From Octopus sinensis (Eukaryota): a DNA stretch of 64,000 nucleotides. Every line of letters begins with the position of its first letter. The first letter of the stretch is position 1. The DNA lies in NCBI RefSeq assembly GCF_006345805.1, contig NW_021825323.1, positions 1,229,440 to 1,293,439 on the forward strand, in the 5' to 3' direction. Under the pieces are notes generated by a model. It worked only from the letters and a program-made list of their open reading frames with translations, made no database searches and was not told the DNA's origin. This document shows, in pieces, positions 11,322-49,333 of this stretch. Made by a program: the position numbers and the translations under genes.

Positions 11322-11402
11322 TTTTAGATTTTTAATTTATGTTTTTTTAATTTATAATGAATATTTTTTAATAATTTTATTTAAATTAAAGTGTGAGGTT
11401 GC

Positions 11403-16318: not shown

Positions 16319-16384
16319 TCACTTTTTGTTTTTTATAAAAATTTTTAAAGGAGTTAGATTTAATGAATTAGTGAAATTAGGGGG

Positions 16385-16660
16385 TTAGACGTCATTTATA
16401 TAGTCATTCGGATTCTTGCGATGTGCCTGTTCAAATTCATTATCGGCCCATTTGATGGTGAGATAGCCCAGTGCGATGGCTAAGTGATTGTGGCACTACT
16501 CTTACGTGTGGCCACAGTTATGAAACTACGTTTGAAGCGATAAATCAATTTGGGAATTCCGTTTTTGAAATAGCCTGGATATGCTTTTTGGTGCAAAGGG
16601 GGAAATTGTAAATTCCACAACTCCGCGAATGTGAGCCAAGTTTCCAAATTCTTTTCCCAT
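16385..16660 (-). pseudogene. UQCRQ: Cytochrome bc1 complex subunit 8 (QCR8), copy A, +1 frameshift
   Basis: Same gene as 39127-39401 but one base longer: an extra G at about 16590 breaks the frame after PFA. Could be an assembly error. Confidence 0.85.
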
Positions 16661-17489: not shown

Positions 17490-19427
17490 TTAGCACTTCA
17501 CATTCCATTTCCAATTACAAGTCTGTATTTGGGAATCATAAAGGAGATTTTCGGGGCAATTAACAACAAATCCTTTATATCCAACATGTGAACATAAAAC
17601 AAACTTCGAACATTCTGGATGTTTATGAATGCCAGGTTTGGTACAAATCAATTCTAGATTTAGTTAAAAAACAACCTCCATTAATAATTTTGAATCCGTC
17701 TAAATTGTCCGTGGTCATTTTTTTAGTATTTTTTTCATAATTGTTTTTTGTAGCTATGACATATATTATACTAATAACATGTTTTTTGAAATGTCGTTTT
17801 CATCTTGTTTTTATTTGTGTTAATAGAATTATTCTTCAAATTTAATTAAAAACCAACATGAACAGATGATATTTTACTTTGCTTGGTTGTATTTTCTGAA
17901 GGTTTAAAATTAATTATATCAAATTCAGTTTCACCAACTGAGTGCGTTGTCTAGTTTAATAAATTTACAAAAATAACAAGCACAGCAGTTTCATTTTTAT
18001 CAACATTGTTGTTATAAATTTTTTTGCTATTTATCCAGTCCTATAGTGTTTGGTTTCTACAATAGTTACAATTCCTGGATAAATTCCCAATGATTCGTGC
18101 ATTTGACCAATCAGTGGACTTTTCCCTTGATTACATATTTTTCCCGAAAAGTCGTCAAGACCCAGTGTCCACACCATCATTCCTCGCAAAGAATTTTTTT
18201 CACGTATTTTGCCATTTAACTATTTCAAAATATTGTACCTTTTCTCGAATACTTCTTTTTGTCTCGATTCCAATCCAATAGTGATTTTTAACTCCGTGAG
18301 ACACTTTTTGTTTATTGTCCCAAATTTCTTGATAATTTTCATTGCAATACTAAGTTATACATATAATAAAACTTCGATAAAGCCCAAAATCCCTGGAGTA
18401 TATAATACGTTTCCTTGAGGAGTCCCTCCAATTTTTTTATCACCAAGCTTTCCGTTTTTGTTAGCAATTTTAAACCCCTGTCCATATGTCCCCAATCCGA
18501 TTACTAATTTCGACCTATTTGCTCCATTTTTGATGTAATAATTAACTGCAAAATCCTAAATTGTGATAAATCATGGTTCAATACAGTATTGAACTCGTCA
18601 TTATCATTTGTCCCGTAAAGTCCGCTATGATGCCCAACAGAGTTCGAAAATTGTCCATAAAAATCATACGTCATTAAAAAAATTAAATCAAGATATCTAA
18701 ATAAGAAGAAAAAAATACTTCGATAAATCTGGAATGTTAAATGAGTTTTCAATCGTTGATCTGCCAGCAGAAACTGCCGCAGTCAACATGTATTTTTTAG
18801 ATTTATTCTTTTTAAAAACATTACTCATTATCTATTTGTAAAAATAGATTAGAAAACTTTGATTAGTCGAGAGAAAGATTCCTTTTGATTGTTTGGATAT
18901 TCCCAATCAATATCAAAACCATCAAAATTATATTGAGACAAATATTTCATTGTGTTTTTTGCAAAAATATGTGCATTTCGGGCACTTTTTGATATTGTAG
19001 TAAATTCTGAAAGTTGCCTTGCCCATCCTCCCACAGAAAGTAATATTTTCAGATCAGGATTTACTTTTTTTAACGACGTAACTTTTTCAAAATTTCCCTT
19101 TCCATCTAAAAAAAATTTTAACCCATTAAAGAACAATTTTTTTCTAAATCAGATATTCGTTCGTCCGTTGATGTAGGTTTCAAATTAACAATATCAATAT
19201 TACTGAATGCATATAATATATGTGTGCAAAGATATGGATACATATCTTCAGCTTTATAAGAAGCTAGCCCATTTCGATAAACTGCCCAATTTGTGTAGTA
19301 ACAAGCCAGAATTTTATCTAACATAAAATATTAGTTTAACCGTCTTTTTTGTTCTTAACTATAAATTGCTGCATTAAAAAAATCTAATTTAAACATTATT
19401 TGTATAAAACAATACTAGAGCCAACAT
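17490..19427 (-). pseudogene. GH18 chitinase with C-terminal CBM14 domain, copy A1 (1-nt deletion at about 18194-18200)
   Basis: CYYTNWAVYR, CTHILYAF, LLSVGGW, FDGFDIDWEYP and MTYDFYG are present, and the CBM14 reads CTKPGIHKHPECSKFVLC...CPENLLYD...CNWKWNVKC*. The deletion frameshifts before GMMVW. Start codon uncertain. Confidence 0.9.
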
Positions 19428-19744
19428 TTAATTACATATATACTCAGTTGTACATTTATATTGCAACTAATTAAATTTTTCTGTTACAGGCAGACACCTG
19501 CTTATAATTTGAATTTTATAATCATGATTAGTAAAATTGATTAACGAAAAGAAGTTAATTAATTCCACAAATAATATTTTCCCTTATAATCCAACAAAAA
19601 TAATTAACATTTCCGATAGGCTAGGAATGTGAACGGCGTTAATCTCGACGTGGTTTAGAAGCATTTGTAGTAAATTCAAATGGCATTCCAGATTTATACG
19701 TATCTTCAAATAAATTTATAAACTTGTGATATAAAGTCGTCTCC

Positions 19745-19884
19745 AAAAAATTTCCCATAAGGCAGGACTTCATCAAACCCCATACTATTGACACAAAATA
19801 ACAGACAAACAAACAAAAAATTTCCCATAAGGCAGGACTTCATCAAACCCCATACTATTGACACAAAATAACAGACAAACAAAC
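19745..19884. repeat. 70-bp tandem repeat, 2 copies
   Basis: tttcccataaggcaggacttcatc... recurs at 19751 and 19821. Confidence 0.95.
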
Positions 19885-20596
19885 ACTTTTTGGTGACAAA
19901 CACTAATTTAATCAGATTAAAAACAATTTAAATATCTTTGAAAAATTATTCAATTCAATCCTATTGTGTTACCTATCTTAGTCTACGTAGTTCACCGTCC
20001 AAAGCCTTGTTTGTGGAGTTTCTCCATGATGTTTATCAGATCTTACCAGATCACCTACCAAAAACATAGAATAAAGATATTTAAATGATAAAGCTTCCAA
20101 ATTGTTTTTTATGTACTTTTATAAATTCAACTTGAAGGCTTTTTGACATCGAATTCATAAAATATTGGATCACCAATTTAGAAATAATAAGTTCCATTAT
20201 TTTCATTTCTAAAGACCTCAAAGCTTATCTTTTTAAATTTTAGTTTTTGAAAACATCTGAAATTAATCTTACCCTGCTAATACAAGTTTAAAAAAGAAAT
20301 GGTTGTCCAAAATATGGTCAGTATGAAAAGTGAAATGAATTTCTAACTAAATGAGAGGTTGGGATGAAAAATCCAAATTGATGCTCGCCTATCCAGTCTT
20401 TTCCTGACATTTAGTCAGCGAGAAGCCCTGGACTGCACTTTTCTGGAGGTCTACAAAGCCAGAAAAAAGAGAAAAATGCGTGGAGTGTCATTCCCTGCTC
20501 ACTTTGAAGACTCAGAAATTAGTTAGGCAATTAATTAGTTTCTTTTTATTAATAAATCAAAGTTATTTTTGGTTAGTACATTACAATTGATGAATT

Positions 20597-22426
20597 TTAG
20601 CACTTCACATTCTATTTCCAATTACAAGTCTGTATTTGGGAATCATAAAGGAGATTTTCGGGGAAATTAACAACAAATCTTTTATATCCAACATGTGAAC
20701 ATAAAACAAACTTCGAACATTCTGGATGTTTATGAATGCCAGGTTTGGTACAAATCAATTCTAGATTTAGTTAAAAAACAACCTCCATTAATAATTTTGA
20801 ATCCGTCTAAATTGTCCGTGGTCATTTTTTTAGTATTTTTTTCATAATTGTTTTTTGTAGCTATGACATATATTATACTAATAACATGTTTTTTGAAATG
20901 TCGTTTTCATCCGTTTTTATTTGTGTTAATAGAATTATTCTTCAATTTATTTAAAAACCAACATGAACAGATGATATTTTACTTTGCTTGGTTGTATTTT
21001 CTGAAGGTTTAAAATTAATTATATCAAATTCAGTTTCACCAACTGAGTGCGTTGTCTAGTTTAATAAATTTACAAAAATAACAAGCACAGCAGTTTCATT
21101 TTTATCAACATTGTTGTTATAAATTTTTTTGCTATTTATCCAGTCCTATAGTGTTTGGTTTCTACAATAGTTACAATTCCTGGATAAATTCCCAATGATT
21201 CGTGCATTTGACCAATCAGTGGACTTTTCCCTTGATTACATATTTTTCCCGAAAAGTCGTCAAGACCCAGTGTCCACACCATCATTCCTCGCAAAGAATT
21301 TTCTTTCACGTATTTTGCCATTTAACTATTTCAAAATATTGTACCTTTTCTCGAATACTTCTTTTTGTCTCGATTCCAATCCAATAGTGATTTTTAACTC
21401 CGTGAGACACTTTTTGTTTATTGTCCCAAATTTCTTGATAATTTTCATTGCAATACTAAGTTATACATATAAATAAAACTTCGATAAAGCCCAAAATCCG
21501 ATTACTAATTTCGACCTATTTGCTCTCATTTTTGATGTAATAATTAACTGCAAAATCCTAAATTGTGATAAATCATGGTTCAATACAGTATTGAACTCGT
21601 CATTATCATTTGTCCCGTAAAGTCCGCTATGATGCCCAACAGAGTTCGAAAATTGTCCATAAAAATCATACGTCATTAAAAAAATTAAATCAAGATATCT
21701 AAATAAGAAGAAAAAAATACTTCGATAAATCTGGAATGTTAAATGAGTTTTCAATCGTTGATCTGCCAGCAGAAACTGCCGCAGTCAACATGTATTTTTT
21801 AGATTTATTCTTTTTAAAAACATTACTCATTATCTATTTGTAAAAATAGATTAGAAAACTTTGATTAGTCGAGAGAAAGATTCCTTTTGATTGTTTGGAT
21901 ATTCCCAATCAATATCAAAACCATCAAAATTATATTGAGACAAATATTTCATTGTGTTTTTTGCAAAAATATGTGCATTTCGGGCACTTTTTGATATTGT
22001 AGTAAATTCTGAAAGTTGCCTTGCCCATCCTCCCACAGAAAGTAATATTTTCAGATCAGGATTTACTTTTTTTAACGACGTAACTTTTTCAAAATTTCCC
22101 TTTCCATCTAAAAACTATTTTAACCCATTAAAGAACAATTTTTTTCTAAATCAGAATATTCGTCCGTTGATGTAGGTTTCAAATTAACAATATCAATATT
22201 ACTGAATGCATATAATATATGTGTGCAAAGATATGGATACATATCTTCAGCTTTATAAGAAGCTAGCCCATTTCGATAAACTGCCCAATTTGTGTAGTAA
22301 CAAGCCAGAATTTTATCTAACATAAAATATTAGTTTAACCGTCTTTTTTGTTCTTAACTATAAATTGCTGCATTAAAAAAATCTAATTTAAACATTATTT
22401 GTATAAAACAATACTAGAGCCAACAT
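20597..22426 (-). pseudogene. GH18 chitinase + CBM14, copy A2 (106-nt deletion and further indels)
   Basis: Near-identical to A1/A3, but lacks the equivalent of about 18393-18498 (junction about 21500). Also has a 2-nt insertion near 21525 and a 1-nt deletion near 20911. Confidence 0.9.
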
Positions 22427-22795
22427 TTAATTACATATATACTCAGTTGTACATTTATATTGCAACTAATTAAATTTTTCTGTTACAGGCAGACACCTGC
22501 TTATAATTTGAATTTTATAATCATGATTAGTAAAATTGATTAACGAAAAGAAGTTAATTAATTCCACAAATAATATTTTCCCTTATAATCCAACAAAAAT
22601 AAAAAAACTTAAAGTAATTCGTTATAATAAAATATAGTATTTTTTTCATTTAACTTAACATTTCCGATAGGCTAGGAATGTGAACGGCGTTAATCTCGAC
22701 GTAGTTTAGAAGCATTTGTAGTAAATTCAAATGGCATTCCAGATTTATACGTATCTTCAAATAAATTTATAAACTTGTGATATAAAGTCGTCTCC

Positions 22796-23005
22796 AAAAA
22801 ATTTCCCATAAGGCAGGACTTCATCAAACCCCATACTATTGACACAAAATAACAGACAAACAAACAAAAAATTTCCCATAAGGCAGGACTTCATCAAACC
22901 CCATACTATTGACACAAAATAACAGACAAACAAACAAAAAATTTCCCATAAGGCAGGACTTCATCAAACCCCATACTATTGACACAAAATAACAGACAAA
23001 CAAAC
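22796..23005. repeat. 70-bp tandem repeat, 3 copies
   Basis: Unit starts at 22802, 22872 and 22942. Confidence 0.95.
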
Positions 23006-23718
23006 ACTTTTTGGTGACAAACACTAATTTAATCAGATTAAAAACAATTTAAATATCTTTGAAAAATTATTCAATCCTAATTGTGTTACCTATCTTAGTC
23101 TACGTAGTTCACCGTCCAAAGCCTTGTTTGTGGAGTTTCTCCATGATGTTTATCAGATCTTACCAGATCACCTACCAAAAACATAGAATAAAGATATTTA
23201 AATGATAAAGCTTCCAAATTGTTTTTTATGTACTTTTATAAATTCAACTTGAAGGCTTTTTGACATCGAATTCATAAAATATTGGATCACCAATTTAGAA
23301 ATAATAAGTTCCATTATTTTCATTTCTAAAGACCTCAAAGCTTATCTTTTTAAATTTTAGTTTTTGAAAACATCTGAAATTAATCTTACCCTGCTAATAC
23401 AAGTTTAAAAAATGGTTGTCCAAAATATGGTCAGTATGAAAAGTGAAATGAATTTCTAACTAAATGAGAGGTTGGGATGAAAAATCCAAATTGATGCTCG
23501 CCTATCCAGTCTTTTCCTGACATTTAGTCAGCGAGAAGCCCTGGACTGCACTTTTCTGGAGGTCTACAAAGCCAGAAAAGAAGAGAAAAAGAGAAAAATG
23601 CGTGGAGTGTCATTCCCTGCTCACTTTGAAGACTCAGAAATTAGTTAGGCAATTAATTAGTTTCTTTTTATTAATAAATCAAAGTTATTTTTGGTTAGTA
23701 CATTACAATTGATGAATT

Positions 23719-25655
23719 TTAGCACTTCACATTCTATTTCCAATTACAAGTCTGTATTTGGGAATCATAAAGGAGATTTTCGGGGAAATTAACAACAAAT
23801 CCTTTATATCCAACATGTGAACATAAAACAAACTTCGAACATTCTGGATGTTTATGAATGCCAGGTTTGGTACAAATCAATTCTAGATTTAGTTAAAAAA
23901 CAACCTCCATTAATAATTTTGAATCCGTCTAAATTGTCCGTGGTCATTTTTTTAGTATTTTTTTCATAATTGTTTTTTGTAGCTATGACATATATTATAC
24001 TAATAACATGTTTTTTGAAATGTCGTTTTCATCTCGTTTTTATTTGTGTTAATAGAATTATTCTTCAAATTTAATTAAAAACCAACATGAACAGATGATA
24101 TTTTACTTTGCTTGGTTGTATTTTCTGAAGGTTTAAAATTAATTATATCAAATTCAGTTTCACCAACTGAGTGCGTTGTCTAGTTTAATAAATTTACAAA
24201 AATAACAAGCATAGCAGTTTCATTTTTATCAACATTGTTGTTATAAATTTTTTTGCTATTTATCCAGTCCTATAGTGTTTAGTTTCTACAATAGTTACAA
24301 TTCCTGGATAAATTCCCAATGATTCGTGCATTTGACCAATCAGTGGACTTTTCCCTTGATTACATATTTTTCCCGAAAAGTCGTCAAGACCCAGTGTCCA
24401 CACCATCATTCCTCGCAAAGAATTTTCTTTCACGTATTTTGCCATTTAACTATTTCAAAATATTGTACCTTTTCTCGAATACTTCTTTTTGTCTCGATTC
24501 CAATCCAATAGTGATTTTTAACTCCGTGAGACACTTTTTGTTTATTGTCCCAAATTTCTTGATAATTTTCATTGCAATACTAAGTTATACATATAAATAA
24601 AACTTCGATAAAGCCCAAAATCCCTGGAGTATATAATACGTTTCCTTGAGGAGTCCCTCCAATTTTTTTATCACCAAGCTTTCCGTTTTTGTTAGCAATT
24701 TTAAACCCCTGTCCATATGTCCCCAATCCGATTACTAATTTCGACCTATTTGCTCCATTTTTGATGTAATAATTAACTGCAAAATCCTAAATTGTGATAA
24801 ATCATGGTTCAATACAGTATTGAACTCGTCATTATCATTTGTCCCGTAAAGTCCGCTATGATGCCCAACAGAGTTCGAAAATTGTCCATAAAAATCATAC
24901 GTCATTAAAAAAATTAAATCAAGATATCTAAATAAGAAGAAAAAAATACTTCGATAAATCTGGAATGTTAAATGAGTTTTCAATCGTTGATCTGCCAGCA
25001 GAAACTGCCGCAGTCAACATGTATTTTTTAGATTTATTCTTTTTAAAAACATTACTCATTATCTATTTGTAAAAATAGATTAGAAAACTTTGATTAGTCG
25101 AGAGAAAGATTCCTTTTGATTGTTTGGATATTCCCAATCAATATCAAAACCATCAAAATTATATTGAGACAAATATTTCATTGTGTTTTTTGCAAAAATA
25201 TGTGCATTTCGGGCACTTTTTGATATTGTAGTAAATTCTGAAAGTTGCCTTGCCCATCCTCCCACAGAAAGTAATATTTTCAGATCAGGATTTACTTTTT
25301 TTAACGACGTAACTTTTTCAAAATTTCCCTTTCCATCTAAAAACTATTTTAACCCATTAAAGAACAATTTTTTTCTAAATCAGAATATTCGTCCGTTGAT
25401 GTAGGTTTCAAATTAACAATATCAATATTACTGAATGCATATAATATATGTGTGCAAAGATATGGATACATATCTTCAGCTTTATAAGAAGCTAGCCCAT
25501 TTCGATAAACTGCCCAATTTGTGTAGTAACAAGCCAGAATTTTATCTAACATAAAATATTAGTTTAACCGTCTTTTTTGTTCTTAACTATAAATTGCTGC
25601 ATTAAAAAAATCTAATTTAAACATTATTTGTATAAAACAATACTAGAGCCAACAT
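23719..25655 (-). CDS. GH18 chitinase + CBM14, copy A3 (no indel seen; best candidate for the functional copy)
   Basis: Catalytic DxDxE motif FDGFDIDWEYP intact. Exons checked join in frame through 23-29-nt GT-AG introns, except one intron without an AG acceptor (see findings). Start codon uncertain. Confidence 0.8.
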
Positions 25656-26117
25656 TTAATTACATATATACTCAGTTGTACATTTATATTGCAACTAATT
25701 AAATTTTTCTGTTACAGGCAGACACCTGCTTATAATTTGAATTTTATAATCATGATTAGTAAAATTGATTAACGAAAAGAAGTTAATTAATTCCACAAAT
25801 AATATTTTCCCTTATAATCCAACAAAAATAAAAAAACTTAAAGTAATTCGTTATAATAAAATATAGTATTTTTTTCATTTAACTTAACATTTCCGATAGG
25901 CTAGGAATGTGAACGGCGTTAATCTCGACGTGGTTTAGAAGCATTTGTAGTAAATTCAAATGACATTCCAGATTTATACGTATCTTCAAATAAATTTATA
26001 AACTTGTGATATAAAGTCGTCTCCAAAAAATTTCCCATAAGGCAGGACTTCATCAAACCCCATACTATTGACACAAAATAACAGACAAACAAACAAAAAA
26101 TTTCCCATAAGGCAGGA

Positions 26118-26334
26118 CTTCCAAAATTCTACATTTTAATTTAAGACTTTTAATTCTCCTTTATCAAAATAGAGACTAAACATTGTCTAAATTTCTGAAA
26201 AAGTTTAGTATTCAAAAGGGTTTAATATTTCTGTTTAATCTCAGAAATGGAACAAGTCCAGGAAATCAAAAACTTTCTTAAGATTGAACCATGAAGAAAA
26301 CTTTCTTAAGATTAATATTATCGAAGTTTTTTCA
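26118..26334 (+). repeat. 217-bp segment copied from 44666-44882 at the A/B junction
   Basis: Same length as 44666-44882 with 4 mismatches seen; cttc microhomology at the left junction. Confidence 0.9.
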
Positions 26335-26930: not shown

Positions 26931-26959
26931 TGGAAAAGTTGCTAAATTTCAAAAACTTT

Positions 26960-28900: not shown

Positions 28901-30041
28901 AGTCAAGGCAGTGGAAAAATTTGAAGAGAGAAGGGTCAATGCTGGGTCCATATGCCACACTCACGTGACTGACTCTACAATCCCTACGTTACAAATACTC
29001 GAATCGAGGTCGTAAAAATACTTGAGGGGAAACAGTGACTTTCGAATCTCGAAATCCCCGAATGGAATGGCGACTTGGTCTACCAGAGGACACAATAGTC
29101 AACTCAAATATGTCCCCATCAGTTCTGCCCCTCCAAACAGTCCCCAAAAACCGACAATTATTCCGAAGAATAATAGACAGGGAATAGTCCCGGAGAGTAG
29201 TCTTCATTTCTTCAAACTCGAAAACGACAAAAGAGAGTGCTGAATGATGTCTCCCCACTGTCAAAACTACTCCTCACTCACACAATCCACCATTCAGACT
29301 CCACTCGCTTAATAAACCCCAAAATATTGTCCTCTCCAAAAACGGAGGGATCTGACAAGGCTTTGAGGGAGACCCCTTTTAGACCGACAGATGGTTTTGA
29401 TCCCTTCTTGTTGCCGACGGTGAATCCCCACTCGCTCAATGTCCTACTGAGGAGTGTTCGTGGCAGTCTACATAAATCGACGAGTCTGTCCATCACTCAA
29501 CAATAAAACAAGGACACATGGAGATGAAATCAGTTGGAGAAGTAAAAAATAAATAAATTTATATCCAGTTAATAAAATCCATAAAACTCCAGACTAAGTC
29601 AAAATCCTCAAGAAACGACAAATTCATGATCAAGATCAAACTTGTCTCCTTTGGCCTTAAGCTTAGCTTTAATTTGTTCAAAAACGGGAATTTCCTAAAA
29701 TAGACATTAAATAAAATACTTTGACATCTCCTTCAGAGTCGATTACGTTGATAGCCACAGCACTGTGCTTGGAGAAGTAAAAACTAGTCAAAGCATGGTG
29801 AGTGTCACTAATCTCGACAACAACACTGTCCGACTTGTCCACGTTTACAGATGGGCACTGTCCGAGAATCTACCATGACAGTCCAAAAGACCTTAATTTT
29901 GACATCCTGAGAATTGAACAAGATGAATGGTCACAGGAACAAGATGAATGGTCACAGGTGTAGTGAATAGCATATACTTCAAAAGTCGGCATAATAGTTC
30001 ACAAATAAAATACACAAAATTAATAATATAACACCCATTAA

Positions 30042-32132: not shown

Positions 32133-32545
32133 ATAACACCCATTAATATTGTAATCTATCTTAACGATTATTCACTTAAAAAACAAAATACTACATTACA
32201 AAAATACGTGGTTAAATTCCTAAAAAATCGTTAAAAATACGAAATCAATAAAAAATAAACAAAATCTTTTGAAAAGTAAAAAAAGTTGTACAAAATATAA
32301 TCAGTGTCAGTAACTGCTTCCAATTAGTACATTCTTCCAAATCTTCCCTATAGATTAAAAATAGGATTAACCACTCTCTAACAGGAATAAAAATTTCCAA
32401 TAATATTAAAAAATATTATAATTAAAAGAAACAATAAATTCAATTAATTTGAAACTAAATGTTTTATCGTTTTTTGTTGTGCACTTGATAATTTAGCCAT
32501 TTTTTGAACATTAAAATTCATCAATAAAAAATCAGAAACAATTTT

Positions 32546-34381: not shown

Positions 34382-34518
34382 TCTGCAAAATATGTGGCTT
34401 ATGCCATTTTTTATTTTAATCACTTTTTATTTAAATAATTTTCTATTTTTAACTATCATAGTTTTTCATGTAAATAAAGTTAGATGGTTTTTTTAGATTT
34501 TTAATTTATGTTTTTTTA

Positions 34519-37500: not shown

Positions 37501-39066
37501 ACAGAATTCATCCATTCGGAAGACACCTGTTCTGACTTGGGTTTTCTGGGTTGTTTAACTGTAGATTGCATGTGGGTTACAATGGTGAGGGAAATGCTTT
37601 CGAATATGCTCTATTCTCCTGAATATTACATCCCAGGTCTGAATTTGCTGTCCTCTCTACTGCCCCCTCCAATTGAGCTCGTCCAAACTTCTACTTTCCG
37701 CCTTCTGTGGGAAAAACATCTAATGGTAGTCAAGTTGGATATTGGCAAGATGCTCAGAACTCTTGGAAGTTGGTTTTTTGCACAAACACGCAGTTTCGTC
37801 CTCCATTCCAGTTCGACGTCGTCTTTTGCGAGTTTTGCGTCAACTTGTGGATTTGGGTGTAGAAATGGGGACATTTGTCATTCGGTGTCTGCTTTTGTTT
37901 CATTTGTAGGTCGTTGGTGTTGCTTGTGTGTGATTTTGTCAACGAGGGTGAAGACCTGATGGTTCGAGGGGATCAAACGATGAATCTTTGTGCCCTTTTC
38001 GCACTCGAGTTGTTTGTTGCCATTGCTGGAAAGACAGAAATTGGAATGTCTTGTTTTGCGTGTCTTCTTCTAAATTCAAGGTCATGTTTGATCACATTTT
38101 GTAGTGAATCTGCATTTTTTGAAGCGTTTTTATTGACCCTCGTCAGGATATTTGAGGGCGACCCATCCAGAAATGAGGTCATGACTAATCTGGGTCAACA
38201 GATTACCGCGGTTTGACTTTATTTCAATATTTTAGACTTATTTCGAGTATTTATGTTCATATTTTCCATCAAATAAGGTTTTTTTGTGTTTATGAAGATT
38301 TTCAGATTTTCCAATATTTGATGCCACTGTTTATAAACAAGACTTTTGGTCGAATTTGTCAGGCTCTGATTCACCACATTCTCTGCTCAAGACGTGACTC
38401 GGTCAATGTGTCCATTCATACTGTTGAGTTACTGGCTTGTAGAGGAAATGCTGGATTGATATTCGAGTTAACCAAATTTAGATTATTTGTAGAGCCTTGG
38501 GTAATATGAACTCACTGGGGTCTGATTTCCACTCTTTTATTGATTCCTGTTTTAATAGTTCTTTGATAGATTTGCTAATATCTGTCATTCGACTGCTGGG
38601 TTGTCTCGTTGTACATTTTCAAAGACAATTTTGACTTATTAGAGAAGGCTTTGCACAGTGAAGCGGGAATGAATTTTGTGGATAACTACATGTCTGATCA
38701 CCTACATTTGAGGCGGTAGTGTTAAATATGAGTTAGGTGTAGAGAACATTCCATGTTGTATGACACGAGTGGACAGAGTAGAGGAATACGGGCTTATGTT
38801 GCCCCAATGCGTGGTCGGAGAATTGGAGGACGGGGAATGTCAGTCTCGGCTATTCGGAGTTCAAATAGCAGTAGATATTCGTCATTGCACATTGATGAAT
38901 TTAAACGACTGACAAACCCTACTTTGAATGTTTATTTGTGCATTTATATTCATAGACCACACCCTTGCCAGAACAGTCGGATAACGACGATCTGACCTAC
39001 CTCACAAGTTTGTCCCCATCAGACCATGGTTGTAGGTTTTATTACCGGAAATCATTAATTTGTTGA
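34519..39066 (+). pseudogene. VIRMA: Virilizer / VIRMA, copy B (start codon lost; internal deletion)
   Basis: A 55-nt deletion (equivalent to 11350-11404) removes the upstream region and AT of the ATG. The 377 nt equivalent to 15497-15873 are replaced by ttca at 38618-38621. Confidence 0.85.
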
Positions 39067-39126
39067 TCACTTTTTGTTTTTTATAAAAATTTTTAAAGGA
39101 GTTAATGAATTAGTGAAATTATGGAG

Positions 39127-39401
39127 TTAGACGTCAGTTATATAGTCATTCGGATTCTTGCGATGTGCCTGTTCAAATTCATTATCGGCTCATTTGATGG
39201 TGAGATAGCCCAGTGCGATGGCTAAGTGATTGTGGCACTACTCTTACGTGTGGCCACAGTTATGAAACTACGTTTGAAGCGATAAATCAATTTGGGAATT
39301 CCGTTTTTGAAATAGCCTGGATATGCTTTTTGTGCAAAGGGGGAAATTGTGAATTCCACAACTCCGCGAATGTGACCCAAGTTTCCAAATTCTTTTCCCA
39401 T
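39127..39401 (-). CDS. UQCRQ: Cytochrome bc1 complex subunit 8 (QCR8), copy B, intact, 82 aa
   Basis: MGKEFGNLGHIRGVVEFTISPFAQKAYPGYFKNGIPKLIYRFKRSFITVATP/IALGYLTIKWADNEFEQAHRKNPNDYITDV*, with one 26-nt GT-AG intron. Matches the UQCRQ family (MGREFGNL...SPFEQRAYP...GIP...RKNP). Confidence 0.92.
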
Positions 39402-39486
39402 CTACAAATATAAAAACTGCCACACAAGCGTACACTCTAATGTTGCGTTTTAATTATATTTATACTTTAATAAAAACTATATAAAT

Positions 39487-39790
39487 GTGTTTAATCTTAA
39501 ATAGAAAAACAAATGAGCGAAAATGATTATCATAATCTTAAGCTGCTGATGATCAAAAAGACGTTGCCCTTTAGGATCGCAATGGATATTCTTTGGAACA
39601 ACCATTGCTTCTCCCGAGGCTCTCTCCGTCTTCTCGAGATCAGATTCCCGATTTTAACGACGAGTTCAAACGATTTTTGGCTCATGGCCCCGGAGGTTTC
39701 TACAGATATTGGGGAGAAGATAAAGTTGTCTAGCAGGTTGGAATATTTCTGAGCTTTATGTACCTCAGCCTTCTCAGCGGCTGAGCCTGG
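39487..39790 (-). mobile_element. 5'-truncated CRE-like 3' end (304 bp)
   Basis: PGSAAEKAEVHKAQKYSNL...PISVETSG...FQRISIAILKGN. TSD actatataaat (39476-39486 and 39791-39801); empty sites in copies A and C. Confidence 0.9.
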
Positions 39791-40501
39791 ACTATATAAA
39801 TTATATTTTTGGTGACAAACACTAATTTAATCAGATTAAAAACAATTTAAATATCTTTGAAAAATTATTCAATCCTAATTGTGTTACCTATCTTAGTCTA
39901 CGTAGTTCACCGTCCAAAGCCTTATTTGTGGAGTTTCTCCATGATGTTTATCAGATCTTACCAGATCACCTACCAAAAACATAGAATAAAGATATTTAAA
40001 TGATAAAGCTTCCAAATTGTTTTTTATGTACTTTTATAAATTCAACTTGAAGGCTTTTTGACATCGAATTCAAAATATTGGATCATCAATTTAGAAATAA
40101 TAAGTTCCATTATTTTCATTTCTAAAGACCTCAAAGCTTATCTTTTTAATTTAGTTTTGAAAACATCTGAAATTAATCTTACCCTGCTAATACAAGTTTA
40201 AAAAAATGGTTGTCCAAAATATGGTCAGTATGAAAAGTGAAATAAATTTCTAACTAAATGAGAGGTTGGGATGAAAAATCCAAATTGATGCTCGCCTATC
40301 CAGTCTTTTCCTGACATTTAGTCAGCGAGAAGCCCTGGACTGCACTTTTTTGGAGGTCTACAAAGCCAGAAAAAAGAGAAAAATGCGTGGAGTGTCATTC
40401 CCTGCTCACTTTGAAGACTCAGAAATTAGTTAGGCAATTAATTAGTTTTTTTATTAATAAATCAAAGTTATTTTTGGTTAGTACATTACAATTAATTAAT
40501 T

Positions 40502-42430
40502 TTAGCACTTCACATTTCATTTCCAATTACAAGTCTGTATTTGGGAATCATAAAGAAGATTTTCGGGGCAATTAACAACAAATCCTTTGTATCCAACATG
40601 TGAACATAAAAAAACTTCGAACATTCTGGATGTTTATGAATGCCAGGTTTGATACAAATCAATTCTAGATTTAGTTAAAAAACAACCTTCATTAATAATT
40701 TCGAATCCGTCTAAATTGTCCGTGGTCATTTTTTTAGTATTTTTTTCATAATTGTTTTTTGTAGCTATGACATATATTATACTAATAACATGTTTTTTGA
40801 AATGTCGTTTTCATCCTGTTTTTATTTGTTTTAATAGAATTATTCTTCAAATTTATTTAAAAACCAACATGAACGGATGATATTTTACTTTGCTTGGTTG
40901 TATTTTCTAATGGTTTAATATTAATTATATCAAATTCAGTTTCACCAACTGAGTGCGTTGTCTAGTTTAATAAATTTACAAAAATAACAAGCATAGCAGT
41001 TTCATTTTTATCAACATTGTTGTTATAAATTTTTTTGCTATTTATCCAGTCCTATAGTGTTTAGTTTCTACAATAGTTACAATTCCTGGATAAATTCCCA
41101 ATGATTCGTGCATTTGACCAATCAGTGGACTTTTCCCTTGATTACATATTTTTCCCGAAAAGTCGTCAAGACCCAGTGTCCAGACCATCATTCCTCGCAA
41201 AGAATTTTCTTTCACGTATTTTGCCATTTAACTATTTCAAAATATTGTACCTTTTCTCGAATACTTCTTTTTGTCTCGATTCCAATCCAATAGTGATTTT
41301 TAACTCCGTGAGACACTTTTTGTTTATTGTCCCAAATTTCTTGATAATTTTCATTGCAATACTAAGTTATACATATAAATAAAACTTCGATAAAGCCCAA
41401 AATCCCTGGAGTATATAATACGTTTCCTTGAGGAGTCCCTCCAATTTTTTTATCACCAAGCTTTCCGTTTTTGTTAGCAATTTTAAACCCTTGTCCATAT
41501 GTCCCCAATCCGATTACTAATTTCGACCTATTTGCTCCATTTTTGATGTAATAATTAACTGCAAAATCCTAAATTGTGATAAATCATTGTTCAATACAGT
41601 ATTGAACTCGTCATTATCATTTGTCCCGTAAAGTCCGCTATGATGCCCAACAGAGTTCGAAAATTGTCCATAAAAATCATACGTCATTAAAAAAATTAAA
41701 TCAAGATATCTAAATAAGAAGAAAAAAATACTTCGATAAATCTGGAATGTTTAATGAGTTTTCAATCGTTGATCTGCCAGCAGAAACTGCCGCAGTCAAC
41801 ATGTATTTTTTAGATTTATTCTTTTTAAAAACATTACTCATTATCTATTTGTAAAAATAGATTAGAAAACTTTGATTAGTCGAGAGAAAGATTCCTTTTG
41901 ATTGTTTGGATATTCCCAATCAATATCAAAACCATCAAAATTATATTGAGACAAATATTTCATTGTGTTTTTTGCAAAAATATGTGCATTTCGGGCACTT
42001 TTTGATATTGTAGTAAATTCTGAAAGTTGCCTTGCCCATCCTCCCACAGAAAGTAATATTTTCAGATCAGGATTTACTTTTTTTAACGACGTAACTTTTT
42101 CAAAATTTCCCTTTCCATCTAAAAATTATTTAACCCATTAAAGAACAATTTTTTTCTAAATCAGAATATTCGTCCTTTGATGTAGGTTTCAAATTAACAA
42201 TATCAATATTACTGAATGCATATAATATATGTGTGCAAAGATATGGATACATATCTTCAGCTTTATAAGAAGCTAGCCCATTTCGATAAACTGCCCAATT
42301 TGTGTAATAACAAGCCAGAATTTTATCTAACATAAAATATTAGTTTAACCGTCTTTTTTGTTCTTAACTATAAATTGCTGCATTAAAAAAATCTAATTTA
42401 AACATTATTTGTATAAAACAATACCAACAT
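40502..42430 (-). pseudogene. GH18 chitinase + CBM14, copy B
   Basis: Near-identical to A3, with a 5-nt deletion near the start (about 42424) and a 1-nt deletion in CBM14 (about 40610). Confidence 0.9.
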
Positions 42431-43989
42431 TTAATTACATATATACTCAGTTGTACATTTATATTGCAACTAATTAAATTTTTCTGTTACAGGCAGACAC
42501 CTGCTTATAATTTGAATTTTATAATCATGATTAGTAAAATTGATTAACGAAAAGAAGTTAATTAATTCCACAAATAATATTTTCCCCTATAATCCAACAA
42601 AAATAAAAAAAACTTAAAGTAATTCGTTATAATAAAATATCGTATTTTTTCCATTTAACTTAACATTTCCGATAGGCTAGGAATGTGAACGGCGTTAATC
42701 TCGACGTGGTTTAAAGCATTTGGAGTAAATTCAAATGACATTCCAGATTTATACGTATCTTCAAATAAATTTATAAACTTGTGATATACAGTCGTCTCCA
42801 AAAAATTTCCCATAAGGCAGGACTTCATCAAACCCCATACTATTGACACAAAATAACAGATTGAATGGATTCCTTCAGCTAAATATAAAAATTAATGGTC
42901 ATAGTGCCTTTCGGTTGTTTTAATTTTTGGTTTTTGAACAGAAACGATATTCCCGCAATGAGTTTCAATTTTTAAAAACTCTCTATTTGAATGAAGTAGA
43001 GCACTTTTATTCTAATAATCGTACCAAATGCCCTTAAGAACGTATCCATTTATTTTAAAGTTATTCTAAAGTTGTATAACCAGTAAAAGCAGGTGGAAAT
43101 AAAATAATAAAACCCCAAATAAACTGGTCATCAATCATATGAGTGTTCAAATCTTTGTTCCACTTTATAAGAGATTGAAATTGTCAGGCTTAAACTGAAA
43201 CAATCATTAAAATAGTTTCTCGCAAACATGGCAGATTGGGTATTTAAACTTCATAGTTTGACTCATTCAAAACGTATGATTATCCATTTATATATTAGAT
43301 TGTTGTCATCCGTGGTTTGGACTTACAAATATATTCACGTTTACAAAGTCTCATTTTGGGAAGTTAAAATTGACATGGGTTACAACGGGATAAACTCAAA
43401 ATGGCAATCAACCGTTTTTAACGGATCTGCTGTGAAAATAAATGGCAAAACAACAAAAATCAAATTTTCGATAATTGATGAAAAACAGACATTGTAATTT
43501 AATAATGGTTTCCATTCTATTCTGGATCCCACGTGTTGGACAAGAATGGCGGGGAACGCTTGGATAAAGTGACACTTTTTACTTTTTTTAACAAAAAGAA
43601 ACTTCACGTGGGTAAACTTCTTTTTTCAAACATGTCACTTGATGAAAAAGAAAATCTTCAAATACTAATGTCTCATAAAGGGTCACATTTTTACGTCAAA
43701 TGGAGTGGCGACCGCTGTATGCTTTGGAAAATTTTTGTTTTTCTTGAAATCAGAGAACTGCCAAAGGATTAAAAAACAAGATTCTTGTGAGATGACAGAC
43801 TCTTAGAAAAGATCTTGGTTGCTTCCCTCAGGACCAACTATCTCTCAATTTTTAATACGTTTTCGGCTTAATAGTGAATTATTAAAAAAAATTCAACTCT
43901 CTAAACTTATAATTAAAAGTGTGGGGAAATATCTACGAAAGAAAATTCATCGGCTTTAATTAAATGTCTAGAAATTCACGAATACTCCA

Positions 43990-44160
43990 ATACGCATTTC
44001 GATTGTTGTACAACAAACCCGATATTGTGGTCCACGATAAGTTCACCGGGAGATTGTTATTGAGGAGATGGACATCACGTGCCTAGATCGTTTGCACACA
44101 GGAAAAGTGAAGAAAAGGAGGCATTATGATCTTCTTGAAAACAAGCTATGGATTTTTGAT
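43990..44160 (+). mobile_element. Degenerate R4/NeSL-like endonuclease fragment
   Basis: YNKPDIVVHDKF...EMDIT...HYDLLENKL parallels YNKPDIFVHDKV...EVGIT...KYDLLASEL of the 30-kb element. Confidence 0.7.
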
Positions 44161-45910: not shown

Positions 45911-47037
45911 ATGAAATCTATAGCAGCCTGTCTATATGAAGACAAACTAAAGCATATAAATTATGAAAAATTGGTGATTCTCTGTCGGTTTCAATAATCT
46001 TGATTAAATATTTTCCAGGAAAAAGAACATAAATCTTTTCAAAGTTAGAATATGGGTTATCATGAACTAGTTTAATTTGAACCATTTTAATGAATCAAGT
46101 AACGACAGCCCAAGTGCATTTTTACACAAATTTAAAAATCCACGTGACACAAATACTCTCAAATTCATTGTATAAATGTAATATTGCAATCTATTTAGAA
46201 ATTGTTATCTCAGCACCCCGAAGCACTCCCAATAGACCCACCCACTGCCATACTTCGGCTTTATGATCGATTGGAGCAATACAAAGGTTTGCAGGAATGC
46301 TTTGAAAACGGTAGTTTACTTACTTGGACGTTAGACGAGAGAATTTTCTGTCCTTGGTTCGCTCCAATAACTCCCGAACTGGTTCCTCCTAATTTTCCGA
46401 TAAGTAAAATGTGATAATTACAATATTCAGTAATCAAGACCGTCGACGCCTGTGCAGTGAATGCACACTCCGTTCATAATTTATAAACTCAATTCTCGAT
46501 AGATGTCCATTGTCTTTGATTCTGCAGGTTTTGGAGTCCTGACAGACCGCCTGGGACAGGAATACCGGAACCACGACGGAGTTATGTTCAAAATATATGT
46601 CGTTGGTCATTATTACAATGTCCAAGCTCGCCAGTCAAGCACTAACATGTTTCCAGGTATTAAAAAATTTTTGTAAGGCTCAGACAAACAAGAGCCAATC
46701 GAGTTTCATTCACAGTCTATTTGCAAGAAATCTATTGCTGACTCGGCTGATCGACTCATTCCCTGGAACTCGCCAGACGATGAGACAATAAAATCTGCAG
46801 CCTTCGCGATTTCAAAGAAATTTGGAATTTCGTTGTTCGGATTTGACGTTCTAAAAGATTCTCTAACAGGCAAAATTGCGATAATTGACATTAATTATTT
46901 TCCCTGTAAGTGTTTTGATTATATTTACAGCATATGATAATATGGTCTCTGTTTCTGAATGTTTAGCATCGTTTTTTGATACTATTCTATCGAGGGATTA
47001 CTCCACAGAATTGGCTGCGTATGAGAGAGTAATCTAA
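45911..47037 (+). CDS. ITPK1: Inositol-tetrakisphosphate 1-kinase; in-frame TAA at 46074-46076 unless a non-canonical acceptor is used
   Basis: LHKF, DPPTAI..LYDR, FP.IKT...HSMSIVF, QEYRNHDGVMFKIYVVG and SLFGFDV...IIDINYFPSY. Eight introns of 21-31 nt. Confidence 0.9.
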
Positions 47038-47751
47038 TTCATTTTTTCAATAAATTATTTGGTTTCAATTGTTTCCACCGAGTGGTAATACCAAAAATTT
47101 CGATCGATGTTCTCTTGCTCGCCACTATTTTTAAAAGTTTGTTTTAAGGAAAATATTTTTTGGTTAAACTATTTTTTAGATAAAATGTTTTCTATTAGGC
47201 TAGGCTTAACATGCGCACGTCTACTAGATTTTTTTAAGTAAAAAAATTCGAATTGTTTCATACACTAAGGAGAATAAAAATCAATCGACGTCGAAATTGG
47301 TAATTCGCAGAAAATGAGCAGTATTCTATAAATATTTGATTAAGTTGATACAAATCAATTCATCATTCACGAATTAGATAAGATGAAAGATTGGCTTAAT
47401 ATTAATCCTGATTCTTTGATTTTTGATTGTTAGAATAAATAACTTGCGAAAAATTCTTTTGTGAATACCGAAGAAGCATAAAAGATACCTAAAAATTAAA
47501 AGCATTTTTTATCAAAAAGAAAAATTTCGATATAAATTTGCCTGAGGTGAATGCCGTCATAGGTCATATGCTGAGTCAATATTTTTTGTCGGTCATAAAA
47601 GATGACAAAAAAGAGAGGATTTAGTATACTAAAAAAACAATTAATGTACTTCCTTTTATAAAAATGTATGAATAATTTTAGATTTTAATATTCGGATATC
47701 TGACCTAATTAGATTGTTTAAATTACATACCGGCGCTCAATTCTTTACTAA

Positions 47752-49333
47752 ATGTCTTTGACAAGTAATAACACAACTCTTATAATTCAGCATTAGAAAA
47801 TGTCCGAGGGAGAGGAATAGTAGTGACATCTACATTTTTTTGTTTGAGTATTATGTATACACAGAGAGTCAATCTAAATGTGGTTGCTGCAGAAATTGTT
47901 ACTGTTGACCAAAATAACACAAATAATGTAAATAAGCATATATGATTTCAAGAAACTGTTTGTTTGGACTACTGGAGAACGAGGAGGCGCTTTTATGTCG
48001 TTTTATATAGGATACACTCTGACTCAAATTCTTGGTGGAGTGTTGGCTAAAAAATATGGTCAAAAATTAATTCTTACCATCTCGATCATAATATCAACTG
48101 CAATGTGTGTTGTTTCCCCCGTGGCAATTGAATACTCTGTTTATGCACTGATAGCTGTGAGAATAATCATGGGACATGTACAGGTCTAAAATGTTTTAAA
48201 GTTTTTAGGCATGCCTTTTGCCTGCAATCTTTCTCATTATTGTGAACTGGTTTCCGGACAATTATCGAAGCACAGCCAGTGGAATGATCATACCAGGTAT
48301 TTTTTTATTGATAATTTTCAGGGACCAATGTTGGTTCTATTTTAGCTTTTTCGGTTGTTTCTGGGCTGGCAAAAAACGAGTATCCATGGAGTACTTCCTT
48401 TTATATTTTTGGCATATTTTTTGCAGTTAATTTTATTTTCAGGAGGTTCAGCAACTCTTTATTTAATATTTTTTCTTGTCTTTTTTACCGACTCTCCAAA
48501 TTATAACAAATGGATCACTTCAGAAGAAAAAAAATTTTTGGAAGAAAACGTTAGCTTAAAAACTTCCAGGACTATAAGGGCAAAATTTTGATTTTATTTT
48601 TAGGATTTCCCGTGGCGTCAAGGACTGACCTCAAAAGTATTTTTATCCTTAATATTTGCGCATTCTGCGGGGACATATAGCCTGTTTTTTATTATTAGTT
48701 ATATTCCGTGGATAATCGACGGGTTGTATAATATCCAAGTAAAAAATGTATTTTTGAATAAATAATAAATTGCAAACGGAAATTACATTTTTGGTTCCAA
48801 TCCTTATTTGGCTTGGAGGATTTGTTTCATGCTATTTATTTGACGTTCTTGCCCAAAGGAAGGTAATGGGGAAATTAAAGTTGAGAAAACTGCTTCATTT
48901 TCTTGGTTTCTATTAAACATAAATTATATTAATCAGGACAGATTCCAGTAAGCATCTTCATGTTGTGTGCCACTCTAACATGTAATAAATTTGTAGGGAT
49001 TACGTGCATTATGATCGCTTGTTTTTTGATAGGAGTATCTCTTTCTGGGGCCTTGCCAACTATTGTCGACATTGGACCAGATTATAGTAGTATATTGATT
49101 GGTATTGCAAACACACTGGGGTCTATTTTTGGAATCATTGCAATCTTTTCTACATCTGAGATTGTGACATTGAGAGTTTGATCAAATAATATTTTTAGAA
49201 TGATTTTAATCAATGGAGGATTGCTTTTAGCATAATGCTTGCAGTCCATTTCGTATCCGTCTTGTTGTTTACAGTTTTTGCACAAATCGAGATTCAGACA
49301 TGGGCAAAAACTAAATCAGTTTCAGAAAATTAA
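47752..49333 (+). CDS. SLC17 (sialin-like) MFS anion transporter; two GC-AG introns and one intron without AG
   Basis: YTQRVNLNV, SFYIGYTLTQILGGVLAKKYG, DSPNYNKWITSEEK, DFPWR and TIVDIGPDYSSILIGIANT are SLC17 family motifs. Ends TAA 49331-49333. Confidence 0.88.

What the first reader, a model, noticed from the sequence alone, without database searches (positions are those of the whole stretch)
18213..48775. Three introns in three genes lack a usable AG, and all three are solved by a GT...AA intron
Chitinase (18216-18238, 23 nt, ends TAA), ITPK1 (46044-46076, 33 nt, ends TAA) and SLC17 (48748-48775, 28 nt, ends CAA) each need an intron to restore a conserved frame, and no AG does so. An AA acceptor in the normal size range works for all three. 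This could reflect tolerated non-canonical acceptors in a size-driven spliceosome, or A-to-I editing of AA to AI (a mechanism known from ADAR2 self-editing). The alternative is independent inactivating mutations in a decaying region, which neighbouring YJU2B shows is plausible.
Basis: inference. Interest (0 to 1): 0.7.

Follow-up and report, generated by a model that had tools for sequence, protein, structure and literature searches.

The report
Two tiny introns ending in AA
In an animal genome whose introns are only about 25 bases long, two otherwise intact genes (a sialin-like transporter and a chitinase family) each have one intron that ends in AA instead of the near-universal AG, while the third claimed case (ITPK1) is an ordinary intron.

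Summary
The finding is partly right. ITPK1 is wrong. SLC17 is right. No AG acceptor works, and removing GT..AA (48748-48775, 28 nt) gives a complete 447-aa protein collinear with human sialin. The chitinase site is right in four paralogues (21322-21344, 24446-24468, 41228-41250, 63208-63230). It fails in the cited copy: a 1-nt deletion there means the 23-nt GT..AA removal runs into a stop, and a 19-nt GT-AG is in frame. I curated 49 introns: 45 GT-AG (21-35 nt), 2 GC-AG and these 2 GT-AA. AGs 19 nt from the donor are bypassed in three normal introns. The chitinase copies differ by 6 synonymous and 2 non-synonymous changes. A true pseudogene next door (YJU2B) carries nonsense and frameshift lesions but no splice-site lesions. 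An acceptor G>A should be only 1-3% of first disabling hits. I therefore favour real use of AA acceptors (about 0.5) over young pseudogenes (about 0.33). No RNA data could be reached, so this is unproven.

The parts
47752..49333 (+). SLC17/sialin-like transporter gene: ATG to TAA, 9 introns, 447 aa
   Evidence: Spliced model gives one uninterrupted ORF. It is collinear with human sialin and VGLUT2 over residues 43-440, E 3e-40.
48748..48775 (+). 28-nt intron GTATTTTTGAATAAATAATAAATTGCAA, i.e. GT..AA. It can also be written AT..AC at 48750-48777.
   Evidence: It contains two in-frame stops. Its removal shifts the frame by +1 into the conserved TEITFLVPILIWLGGFVSCYLFD. No usable AG exists. The junction VKN|TEI aligns to sialin QEN|GFL without a gap.
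48412..48442 (+). 31-nt GC-AG intron of SLC17
   Evidence: The only GT-AG alternatives are 52-61 nt and delete the conserved STSFYIFG. The GC-AG model is collinear with sialin.
48580..48603 (+). 24-nt GC-AG intron of SLC17
   Evidence: The only GT-AG alternative is 54 nt and deletes 10 residues.
24260..25531 (-). Chitinase (GH18) copy 3, from CYYTNW to the stop. It is intact if the last intron is removed as GT..AA.
   Evidence: 376-aa translation with an intact FDGFDIDWEYP catalytic motif. E 2e-76 to an insect chitinase. The segment sirekmakyvkenslrgmmvw aligns to [20 protein letters not shown].
24446..24468 (-). 23-nt intron GTACAATATTTTGAAATAGTTAA (GT..AA), chitinase copy 3
   Evidence: It is the only excision starting at the GT that restores MAKYVKENSLRGMMVW. 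The internal TAG at 19 nt is out of frame.
41228..41250 (-). The same GT..AA intron in chitinase copy 4, which is otherwise intact
21322..21344 (-). The same GT..AA intron in chitinase copy 2, which is broken elsewhere by a +1 insertion and a 106-nt deletion
63208..63230 (-). The same GT..AA intron in chitinase copy 5. The copy is cut by the window end and has a 2-nt exon deletion.
18216..18238 (-). The sequence is the same 23 nt, but here its removal leads to a stop.
18220..18238 (-). 19-nt GT..TAG segment, in frame only in copy 1. It is shorter than any of the 49 curated introns.
18194..18200 (-). A7 run in copy 1 where the other copies have AAAGAAAA. This is the 1-nt deletion that changes which excision is in frame.
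46044..46070 (+). ITPK1 intron 2: an ordinary 27-nt GT..TAG intron, not GT..AA
45911..47037 (+). ITPK1 gene: 8 GT-AG introns of 21-31 nt, 303 aa, intact
51225..53006 (+). NMD3 gene, used as an internal control: 12 GT-AG introns of 23-28 nt, 494 aa, intact
49862..50963 (-). YJU2B/CCDC130-like pseudogene, used as an internal control for decay. It has two in-frame TGA codons (50706-50708 and 50539-50541) and a frameshift at an A5 run (50225-50229). All four introns are GT-AG.

Best explanation
The window comes from an animal with ultra-short introns, here 21-35 nt with a median of 25. It is most likely a dicyemid.

Two introns end in AA, each one G>A transition away from a normal (C/T)AG:
- SLC17 intron 7.
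- The last intron of a five-copy chitinase family.

My best reading is that these introns are still removed at the AA, perhaps less efficiently, and that the genes are functional. In such tiny introns the 3' cut site would be fixed mainly by distance from the 5' end and branch site. An AG that lies too close (19 nt) is skipped, and a non-AG dinucleotide at the permitted distance (23 and 28 nt) can be used.

Shown:
- The sequences and the absence of any usable AG.
- Exact collinearity with homologues when the AA-ended segment is removed.
- Intact ORFs.
- The bypass of AGs at 19 nt in three canonical introns.
- The excess of synonymous changes among the chitinase copies.

Inferred:
- That splicing really happens at AA.
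- The distance-ruler mechanism.
For: (1) ORFs and collinearity. SLC17 gives one 447-aa ORF, collinear with sialin across the junction. Chitinase copies 3 and 4 give complete GH18 proteins. The first codon after the AA (ATG) aligns with a conserved Met, SIREKM vs SIRNKM.

(2) No canonical alternative of normal size exists.

(3) Size rule. In 49 curated introns none is shorter than 21 nt. AGs ending 19 nt from the donor are bypassed in NMD3 52092-52115, YJU2B 50281-50307 and aPKC 8679-8702. The TAG at 19 nt in the chitinase intron is therefore not expected to be used.

(4) Selection. All five chitinase copies carry the AA. Since duplication they differ by 6 synonymous and 2 non-synonymous substitutions (S=230, N=898; binomial p 0.001-0.03). 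Both changes in the exon downstream of the AA are synonymous in the AA-defined frame.

(5) Lesion spectrum. The window's own duplicates show 0.168 indels per substitution, 89% of them frameshifting. SLC17 has 174 nonsense-creating changes. An acceptor G>A is therefore only about 1-3% of first visible disabling hits, yet it is the sole 'lesion' in two independent genes. Copies that are certainly dead (YJU2B, aPKC copy 2, chitinase copies 2 and 5) carry nonsense mutations and indels, and no splice-site hits.

(6) Splice signals look relaxed here. SLC17 has two GC-AG introns. Published logos show reduced 5' and 3' motifs in D. japonicum (PMC13644364).
Against: - There is no RNA evidence. The species is absent from the protein and contig collections.
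- The neighbourhood contains real decay, and three of the five chitinase copies have frameshifting lesions.
- The synonymous-excess test rests on only 8 substitutions. Comparison with flanking non-coding DNA is inconsistent: 0/209 variable sites in the 5' flank against 12/260 in the 3' flank.
- In well-studied spliceosomes a G>A change at the last intron base strongly impairs the second step (my own knowledge).
- The published dicyemid logo still shows AG. Those annotations could not have reported non-AG ends (my inference from the pipelines described).
- My first reading of NMD3 as a further GT..AA case was wrong. This shows how easily such cases are over-called.
Confidence: 0.5

Rival explanations
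1. Acceptor-site loss. The G>A changes destroyed the 3' splice sites. SLC17 and the whole chitinase family are then young pseudogenes (or yield only truncated products) in a duplicated, transposon-rich region that is losing genes.
For: - YJU2B, between SLC17 and NMD3, has two in-frame TGA codons and a frameshift.
- aPKC copy 2 has a 141-nt deletion and an 11-nt insertion.
- Chitinase copy 2 has a +1 insertion and a 106-nt deletion. Copy 5 has a 2-nt deletion. Copy 1 has a 1-nt deletion.
- Copy 1 of the large unnamed gene needs a frameshift that copy 2 does not.
- G>A is the commonest kind of change in an AT-rich genome (my own knowledge).
- Efficient GT-AA splicing without editing has little precedent.
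Against: - Both genes have no other disabling lesion.
- The chitinase copies diverged with about 6:2 synonymous to non-synonymous changes after acquiring the AA.
- The a-priori share of acceptor G>A among first visible lesions is about 1-3% per gene, so two of two is unlikely.
- The certainly dead genes show a different lesion spectrum.
Confidence: 0.33
2. A-to-I editing turns AA into AI, which is read as AG before splicing. This is how ADAR2 edits its own pre-mRNA.
For: Known in human for ADARB1, NRK, HOOK3 and COG8 (PMC4176328).
Against: - Folding 151 nt around each site shows no structure beyond shuffled controls (z -0.94 and +0.39).
- Neither AA lies in a long duplex.
- These are constitutive 23-28-nt introns, not regulated cassette exons.
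- No ADAR gene is in the window, which is not informative for the genome as a whole.
Confidence: 0.03
3. Sequence artefact or minor allele. The true base is G, through a base-call or consensus error or a rare allele captured from pooled animals.
For: - 1-nt differences at homopolymers between copies could partly be assembly errors.
- The A7 run in chitinase copy 1 is of that kind.
Against: - The chitinase AA is present in all five copies, which differ elsewhere by 1-4%.
- The AA sites are substitutions, not homopolymer indels.
- The window has no N.
Confidence: 0.04
4. For SLC17 only: the intron is an AT-AC intron (48750-48777, 28 nt). This is a recognised rare class in which a first-base A pairs with a last-base C.
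For: The excision is in frame and gives a protein of the same length...VKNV|EITF....
Against: - The 5' end ATTTTTGA matches neither the U12 consensus ATATCC nor the local GTA consensus, whereas the GT reading starts GTA.
- There is no U12 branch-site motif.
- The same trick fails for the chitinase, where it gives AC..AT.
Confidence: 0.05

Closest known systems
Ultra-short spliceosomal introns of dicyemids (Dicyema) and myxobolid myxozoans (PMC13644364, PMC6543705, PMC6736024)
   Same: - Length 21-35 nt with a median of 25; the published medians are 27 bp (Dicyema sp., H. salminicola) and 22 bp (T. kitauei, M. rasmusseni).
- 5' signal reduced to GT plus A/T.
- High intron density, conserved intron positions, and a repeat- and LINE-rich genome with about 36% GC.
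   Different: Published logos and annotations show only AG at the 3' end. Here two introns end in AA and two start with GC. Non-AG ends could not have been called by the pipelines used (my inference).
Human GT-AA introns, some converted to GT-AG by ADAR editing (ADARB1, NRK, HOOK3, COG8; PMC4176328)
   Same: GT..AA at the DNA level at a position where splicing is needed.
   Different: The human cases are long introns with alternative exons and double-stranded editing substrates. Here the introns are 23-28 nt, appear constitutive, and have no predicted duplex.
Relaxed donor dinucleotides: GC-AG everywhere, GA-AG in Oikopleura dioica and Eurytemora affinis (PMC7072748)
   Same: A lineage-specific loosening of one splice-site dinucleotide in a compact genome. 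The window also has GC-AG at 2 of 49 introns.
   Different: In those species the relaxation is at the donor's second base. Here the unusual base is the last base of the intron.
Unitary or duplicated pseudogenes disabled by a splice-site mutation
   Same: A single G>A change at an acceptor; a neighbourhood with other dead copies.
   Different: There are no secondary lesions in SLC17 or in chitinase copies 3 and 4. The paralogues show a synonymous excess. The lesion type is improbable as a first hit in two genes.

Membership tests
Ultra-short spliceosomal intron (dicyemid type) | Length within the species' narrow range (about 20-35 nt) | tested here: met
   28 nt and 23 nt, against 21-35 nt for the 45 curated GT-AG introns.
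Ultra-short spliceosomal intron (dicyemid type) | 5' end GT followed by A/T | tested here: met
   GTATTT and GTACAA. Position +3 is A or T in 45 of 49 introns.
Ultra-short spliceosomal intron (dicyemid type) | Removal restores a conserved reading frame, collinear with homologues | tested here: met
   Alignments to sialin and to an insect chitinase run through both junctions. Enumeration.
Ultra-short spliceosomal intron (dicyemid type) | 3' end AG | tested here: not met
   CAA at 48773-48775. TAA at 24446-24448 (- strand) and in all four other chitinase copies.
Ultra-short spliceosomal intron (dicyemid type) | Absent from mature mRNA | not testable with these tools
   No transcript or protein of this species is in the collections.
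ADAR-edited GT-AA intron | AA lies in a double-stranded RNA substrate | tested here: not met
   Fold z-scores are -0.94 and +0.39. The AA is unpaired or in a short weak stem. Long-range or trans pairing was not tested.
ADAR-edited GT-AA intron | A>G mismatch in pre-mRNA reads; ADAR gene present | not testable with these tools
   No reads and no whole genome were available.
Pseudogene disabled at a splice site | Further disabling lesions (stops, frameshifts) in the same copy | tested here: not met
   None in SLC17 or in chitinase copies 3 and 4. Present in copies 1, 2 and 5.
Pseudogene disabled at a splice site | Neutral substitution pattern (dN/dS about 1) | tested here: inconclusive
   6 synonymous against 2 non-synonymous changes, p 0.001-0.03, but only 8 events. 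No paralogue is available for SLC17.
U12-type (AT-AC) intron | 5' ATATCC(T)T and a TCCTTAAC branch site near the 3' end | tested here: not met
   The AT..AC reading of SLC17 starts ATTTTTGA and has no such branch motif. The nearby ATATCC at 48731 gives the wrong frame (checked by hand).

The most novel reading that the evidence does not exclude
In dicyemid-type ultra-short introns the 3' cut site is set by a molecular ruler, and the AG is dispensable. AA-ended introns (and perhaps others) would then be spliced constitutively in functional genes at a rate of a few percent. They would have been invisible to every annotation and read-mapping pipeline that only allows GT/GC-AG. A possible link is the decay of the spliceosome discard-associated factor YJU2B/Saf4 seen in the same window.
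Probability: 0.4. Interest if true: 0.75.

Novelty: new variant of a known kind. Interest (0 to 1): 0.5.

Why it matters
The terminal AG is one of the most invariant signals in eukaryotic gene expression. A natural system that constitutively removes 23-28-nt introns ending in AA would show that position can replace sequence in 3' splice-site choice when the intron is barely longer than the spliceosome's own reach.

It would also mean that gene sets of dicyemids, and perhaps myxozoans, are under-called wherever pipelines forbid non-AG ends.

If the sites instead prove to be dead acceptors, the window documents ongoing gene loss in a reduced parasite genome. A transporter, a chitinase array and a splicing factor would all be caught very early in decay.

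Tried and rejected
1. Ab initio gene finder. I wrote a Viterbi finder using codon log-odds and intron penalties. The codon signal is only 0.13 bit per codon and it chose wrong introns, so I abandoned it for curation. With strong constraints it served as a rough check that the large unnamed gene needs no non-canonical intron in copy 2.

2. NMD3. I first read a junction as a fourth GT..AA case, or as GA..AG. Exhaustive enumeration found a canonical C-rich 23-nt GT-AG intron (51429-51451) that gives exactly the homologues' length. The claim is withdrawn.

3. Searches for this species' proteins or transcripts. The SLC17 model gave best identity 22-28%. The NMD3 model gave best identity 48%. An exact look-up of a window ORF found nothing. 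No transcript evidence is therefore available.

4. U12-type reading of SLC17: wrong frame and no motifs. A two-intron canonical rescue of SLC17: none exists. For the chitinase the only options use 16-22-nt GC-AG or GT-AG mini-introns.

5. RNA editing: no duplex predicted.

6. Rfam and tRNA scans for snRNA genes that might explain altered recognition: no hits.

7. Pfam on fragments of the large duplicated gene: no family found.

8. Supplements of PMC13644364 on D. japonicum intron classes: not held.


Full report
WHAT THE WINDOW IS

The 64-kb window has 29-40% GC and no N. It carries animal genes interrupted by very short introns. I curated 49 introns in six genes by hand and by exhaustive enumeration: 45 are GT-AG (21-35 nt, median 25), 2 are GC-AG and 2 are GT-AA. 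Only two animal groups are reported to have such introns, dicyemids and myxobolid myxozoans (PMC13644364). The GC content, LINE and repeat load, and intron size fit Dicyema (36.7% GC and 49% repeats in PMC6736024; median intron 27 bp in PMC6543705). The species itself is not in the searchable protein or contig collections. The organism is therefore inferred, not shown.

The window is built from three copies of a roughly 12-kb unit (aPKC, a large unnamed gene, chitinase), plus two extra tandem chitinase copies. The copies are 95-99% identical, and transposon fragments lie between them.

CHECK OF THE THREE SITES

ITPK1. The same donor with the TAG at 46068-46070 makes a 27-nt GT-AG intron whose last three bases are the in-frame stop. 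With it and seven other GT-AG introns (21-31 nt) the gene is a complete 303-aa ORF, collinear with human ITPK1 (E 3e-37). The junction LFK|FNL lies opposite VVQ|LNL. This example is withdrawn.

SLC17. Exon 7 ends in frame ...YNIQVKN and runs into TAA TAA. The next conserved segment, TEITFLVPILIWLGGFVSCYLFD, is in the +1 frame. There is no AG between 48740 and 48816. Enumeration of all stop-free in-frame excisions finds no GT/GC-AG solution except a 121-nt one that removes a transmembrane region. No pair of canonical introns works either. Removing 48748-48775 (GTATTTTTGAATAAATAATAAATTGCAA) gives a 447-aa ORF that aligns with human sialin through the junction without a gap. The same excision can be written AT..AC, shifted by 2 nt. 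The gene also has two GC-AG introns for which no GT-AG alternative of normal size exists.

Chitinase. The 23-nt sequence GTACAATATTTTGAAATAGTTAA is present in all five copies. In copies 2-5 its removal joins ...SIREK to MAKYVKENSLRGMMVWTLGLDDF. That matches an insect chitinase ([27 protein letters not shown]) residue for residue, including the Met encoded by the first codon after the AA. The internal TAG at 19 nt is out of frame. The only canonical solution, 56 nt, deletes 12 conserved residues. There the 23-nt removal ends in a stop after 12 codons, and the 19-nt GT-AG segment is in frame and gives a 374-aa ORF.

IS 19 NT A USABLE INTRON?

None of the 49 curated introns is shorter than 21 nt. 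In three canonical introns an AG that ends 19 nt from the donor is passed over for one at 24-27 nt. These are NMD3 52092-52115, YJU2B 50281-50307 and aPKC 8679-8702. In each, only the longer excision keeps the conserved frame. This is also direct evidence from the sequence that 3' site choice here depends on distance.

ARE THE AA-BEARING GENES ALIVE?

Evidence for:
- SLC17 has no other lesion.
- Chitinase copies 3 and 4 are intact and keep the catalytic DxxDxDxE motif.
- All five copies share the AA, so it predates the duplications. Since then the coding sequence has collected 6 synonymous and 2 non-synonymous substitutions, plus one tied to an in-frame 3-nt indel. There are 230 synonymous and 898 non-synonymous sites (binomial p 0.001 to 0.03, depending on how events and mutation bias are counted).
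- The two changes in the last exon are both synonymous in the frame that only the AA excision provides.

Evidence against:
- Copies 2, 5 and 1 carry frameshifting indels.
- The comparison with non-coding flanks is inconsistent.
- The neighbourhood contains unambiguous pseudogenes:
  - YJU2B is collinear with human YJU2B and S. pombe Saf4 but has two in-frame TGA codons and a frameshift at an A5 run.
  - aPKC copy 2 has a 141-nt deletion and an 11-nt insertion.
  - Copy 1 of the large gene needs a frameshift that copy 2 does not.
- The large gene as a whole shows pN/pS of 0.4-0.5 between copies. This is what reciprocal loss after duplication would give.

LESION SPECTRUM

The window's duplicates give 0.168 indel events per substitution, 89% of them frameshifting. 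SLC17 has 174 nonsense-creating single-base changes and nine acceptor Gs. On these numbers an acceptor G>A is about 1% of the first visible disabling hits, or up to about 3% allowing a threefold transition bias. Yet in two independent genes it is the only 'lesion'. The copies that are certainly dead show nonsense mutations and indels, and keep all their GT-AG ends. This asymmetry is hard to reconcile with random decay. It is expected if AA acceptors are tolerated and drift like GC donors do.

OTHER MECHANISMS

- Editing. GT-AA sites made canonical by ADAR are known in human (PMC4176328). Folding 151 nt around each site gives z-scores of -0.94 and +0.39 and no long duplex.
- U12-type splicing. 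The motifs are absent.
- Assembly error. This cannot explain an A shared by five diverged copies. For SLC17 it would have to be a substitution error at exactly the acceptor G.

VERDICT

One of the three examples is wrong. One is mislocated but real in the paralogues. One is right. For the two real cases I favour genuine use of AA as a 3' splice site in a distance-governed mini-intron spliceosome (about 0.5) over very young acceptor-loss pseudogenes (about 0.33). Nothing here shows the spliced RNA, and the statistics rest on few events.

My own false start with NMD3 is a warning. It looked like a fourth GT..AA case until enumeration found a C-rich canonical intron. Such claims need exhaustive alternatives and RNA evidence.

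NOVELTY

GT-AA introns are known as rare curiosities, and ultra-short introns are known in dicyemids. Constitutive AA-ended ultra-short introns in conserved genes have not, to my knowledge or in the papers read, been described. If real, this is a new variant of a known kind.

Noticed in passing
49862-50963 (- strand); TGA at 50706-50708 and 50539-50541; A5 run at 50225-50229: The YJU2B/CCDC130 (Saf4)-like gene has four intact GT-AG introns but two in-frame TGA codons. Each sits exactly where human YJU2B and S. pombe Saf4 both have Gly (GMGVR / VSGAQ). It also has a frameshift in an A5 run. Two nonsense hits both at invariant Gly (GGA>TGA) is an odd coincidence. No in-frame TGA was seen in about 2,500 other curated codons, and none of the six curated genes ends in TGA. 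Saf4 helps stabilise the Ntr1 disassembly complex in discard-bound spliceosome intermediates (PMC12086092), so its decay here may bear on splice-site tolerance.
   Followed up: partly
8940-9075 (+ strand), aPKC copy 1: After DYGLCK the canonical 22-nt GT-AG intron (8952-8973) leads into a frame that is open. However, it leaves the conserved activation-segment motif [16 protein letters not shown] one frame off for about 31 codons, and the conserved frame resumes at [11 protein letters not shown]. No canonical intron reaches the motif's frame; only GG-AG or GT..GA of 23 nt do. The rest of the gene is intact and conserved to its C-terminus. It is either a compensated frameshift, assembly indels, or off-by-one splicing.
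   Followed up: partly
48412-48442 and 48580-48603 (+ strand): Two GC-AG introns lie in the same gene (SLC17) that has the GT..AA intron. None was found in the other 40 curated introns. So 3 of the 4 non-GT-AG introns cluster in one 9-intron gene.
   Followed up: yes
7242-19603, 32133-42606, 58672-64000; tandem chitinase copies at 19744-26121: Three copies of a roughly 12-kb unit (aPKC, a large unnamed gene, chitinase) plus extra chitinase repeats, 95-99% identical. Damage looks reciprocal: unit 1 keeps aPKC but has a frameshifted large gene, while unit 2 has a deleted aPKC but an open large gene. The large gene shows pN/pS of 0.4-0.5 between copies and has no Pfam match.
   Followed up: partly
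NMD3 52092-52115 and 52798-52820; YJU2B 50281-50307 and 50566-50588; aPKC 8679-8702: AG dinucleotides inside introns at 14, 19 and 21 nt from the donor are skipped in favour of AGs at 23-27 nt. This suggests a minimum donor-to-acceptor (or branch-to-acceptor) distance of about 21-22 nt.
   Followed up: yes
48742-48792 (+ strand): The end of SLC17 exon 7 plus the start of the AA intron (AAAAAUGUAUUUUUG) can pair with the start of exon 8 (CGGAAAUUACAUUUUU). This loops out most of the intron and brings the two splice sites together. The overall fold is not better than shuffles (z -0.94), so it may be chance in AT-rich sequence.
   Followed up: no
2486-2782 (+); 29998-32076 (+); 53161-53915 (+); 57617-58329 (+); 749-1378, 9920-10651 and 55081-55581 (-): An SRF-type MADS-box exon (Pfam PF00319, E 2e-18). 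A 693-codon open frame that looks like a LINE reverse transcriptase. ORFs resembling pogo/Tigger and Tc1/mariner transposases. Several reverse-transcriptase-like fragments. Only the MADS box was checked with a tool; the rest were named by eye.
   Followed up: no
51429-51451 and 51630-51653 (+ strand), NMD3: Not all introns are AT-rich. Two NMD3 introns are C- or G-rich: GTTCCCCCACCCAACCACCTCAG, and GTAAGGGAGAGGACTAACCCACAG, which has a yeast-like ACTAAC. The latter is an in-frame, stop-free 24-mer that could be mistaken for coding sequence.
   Followed up: partly
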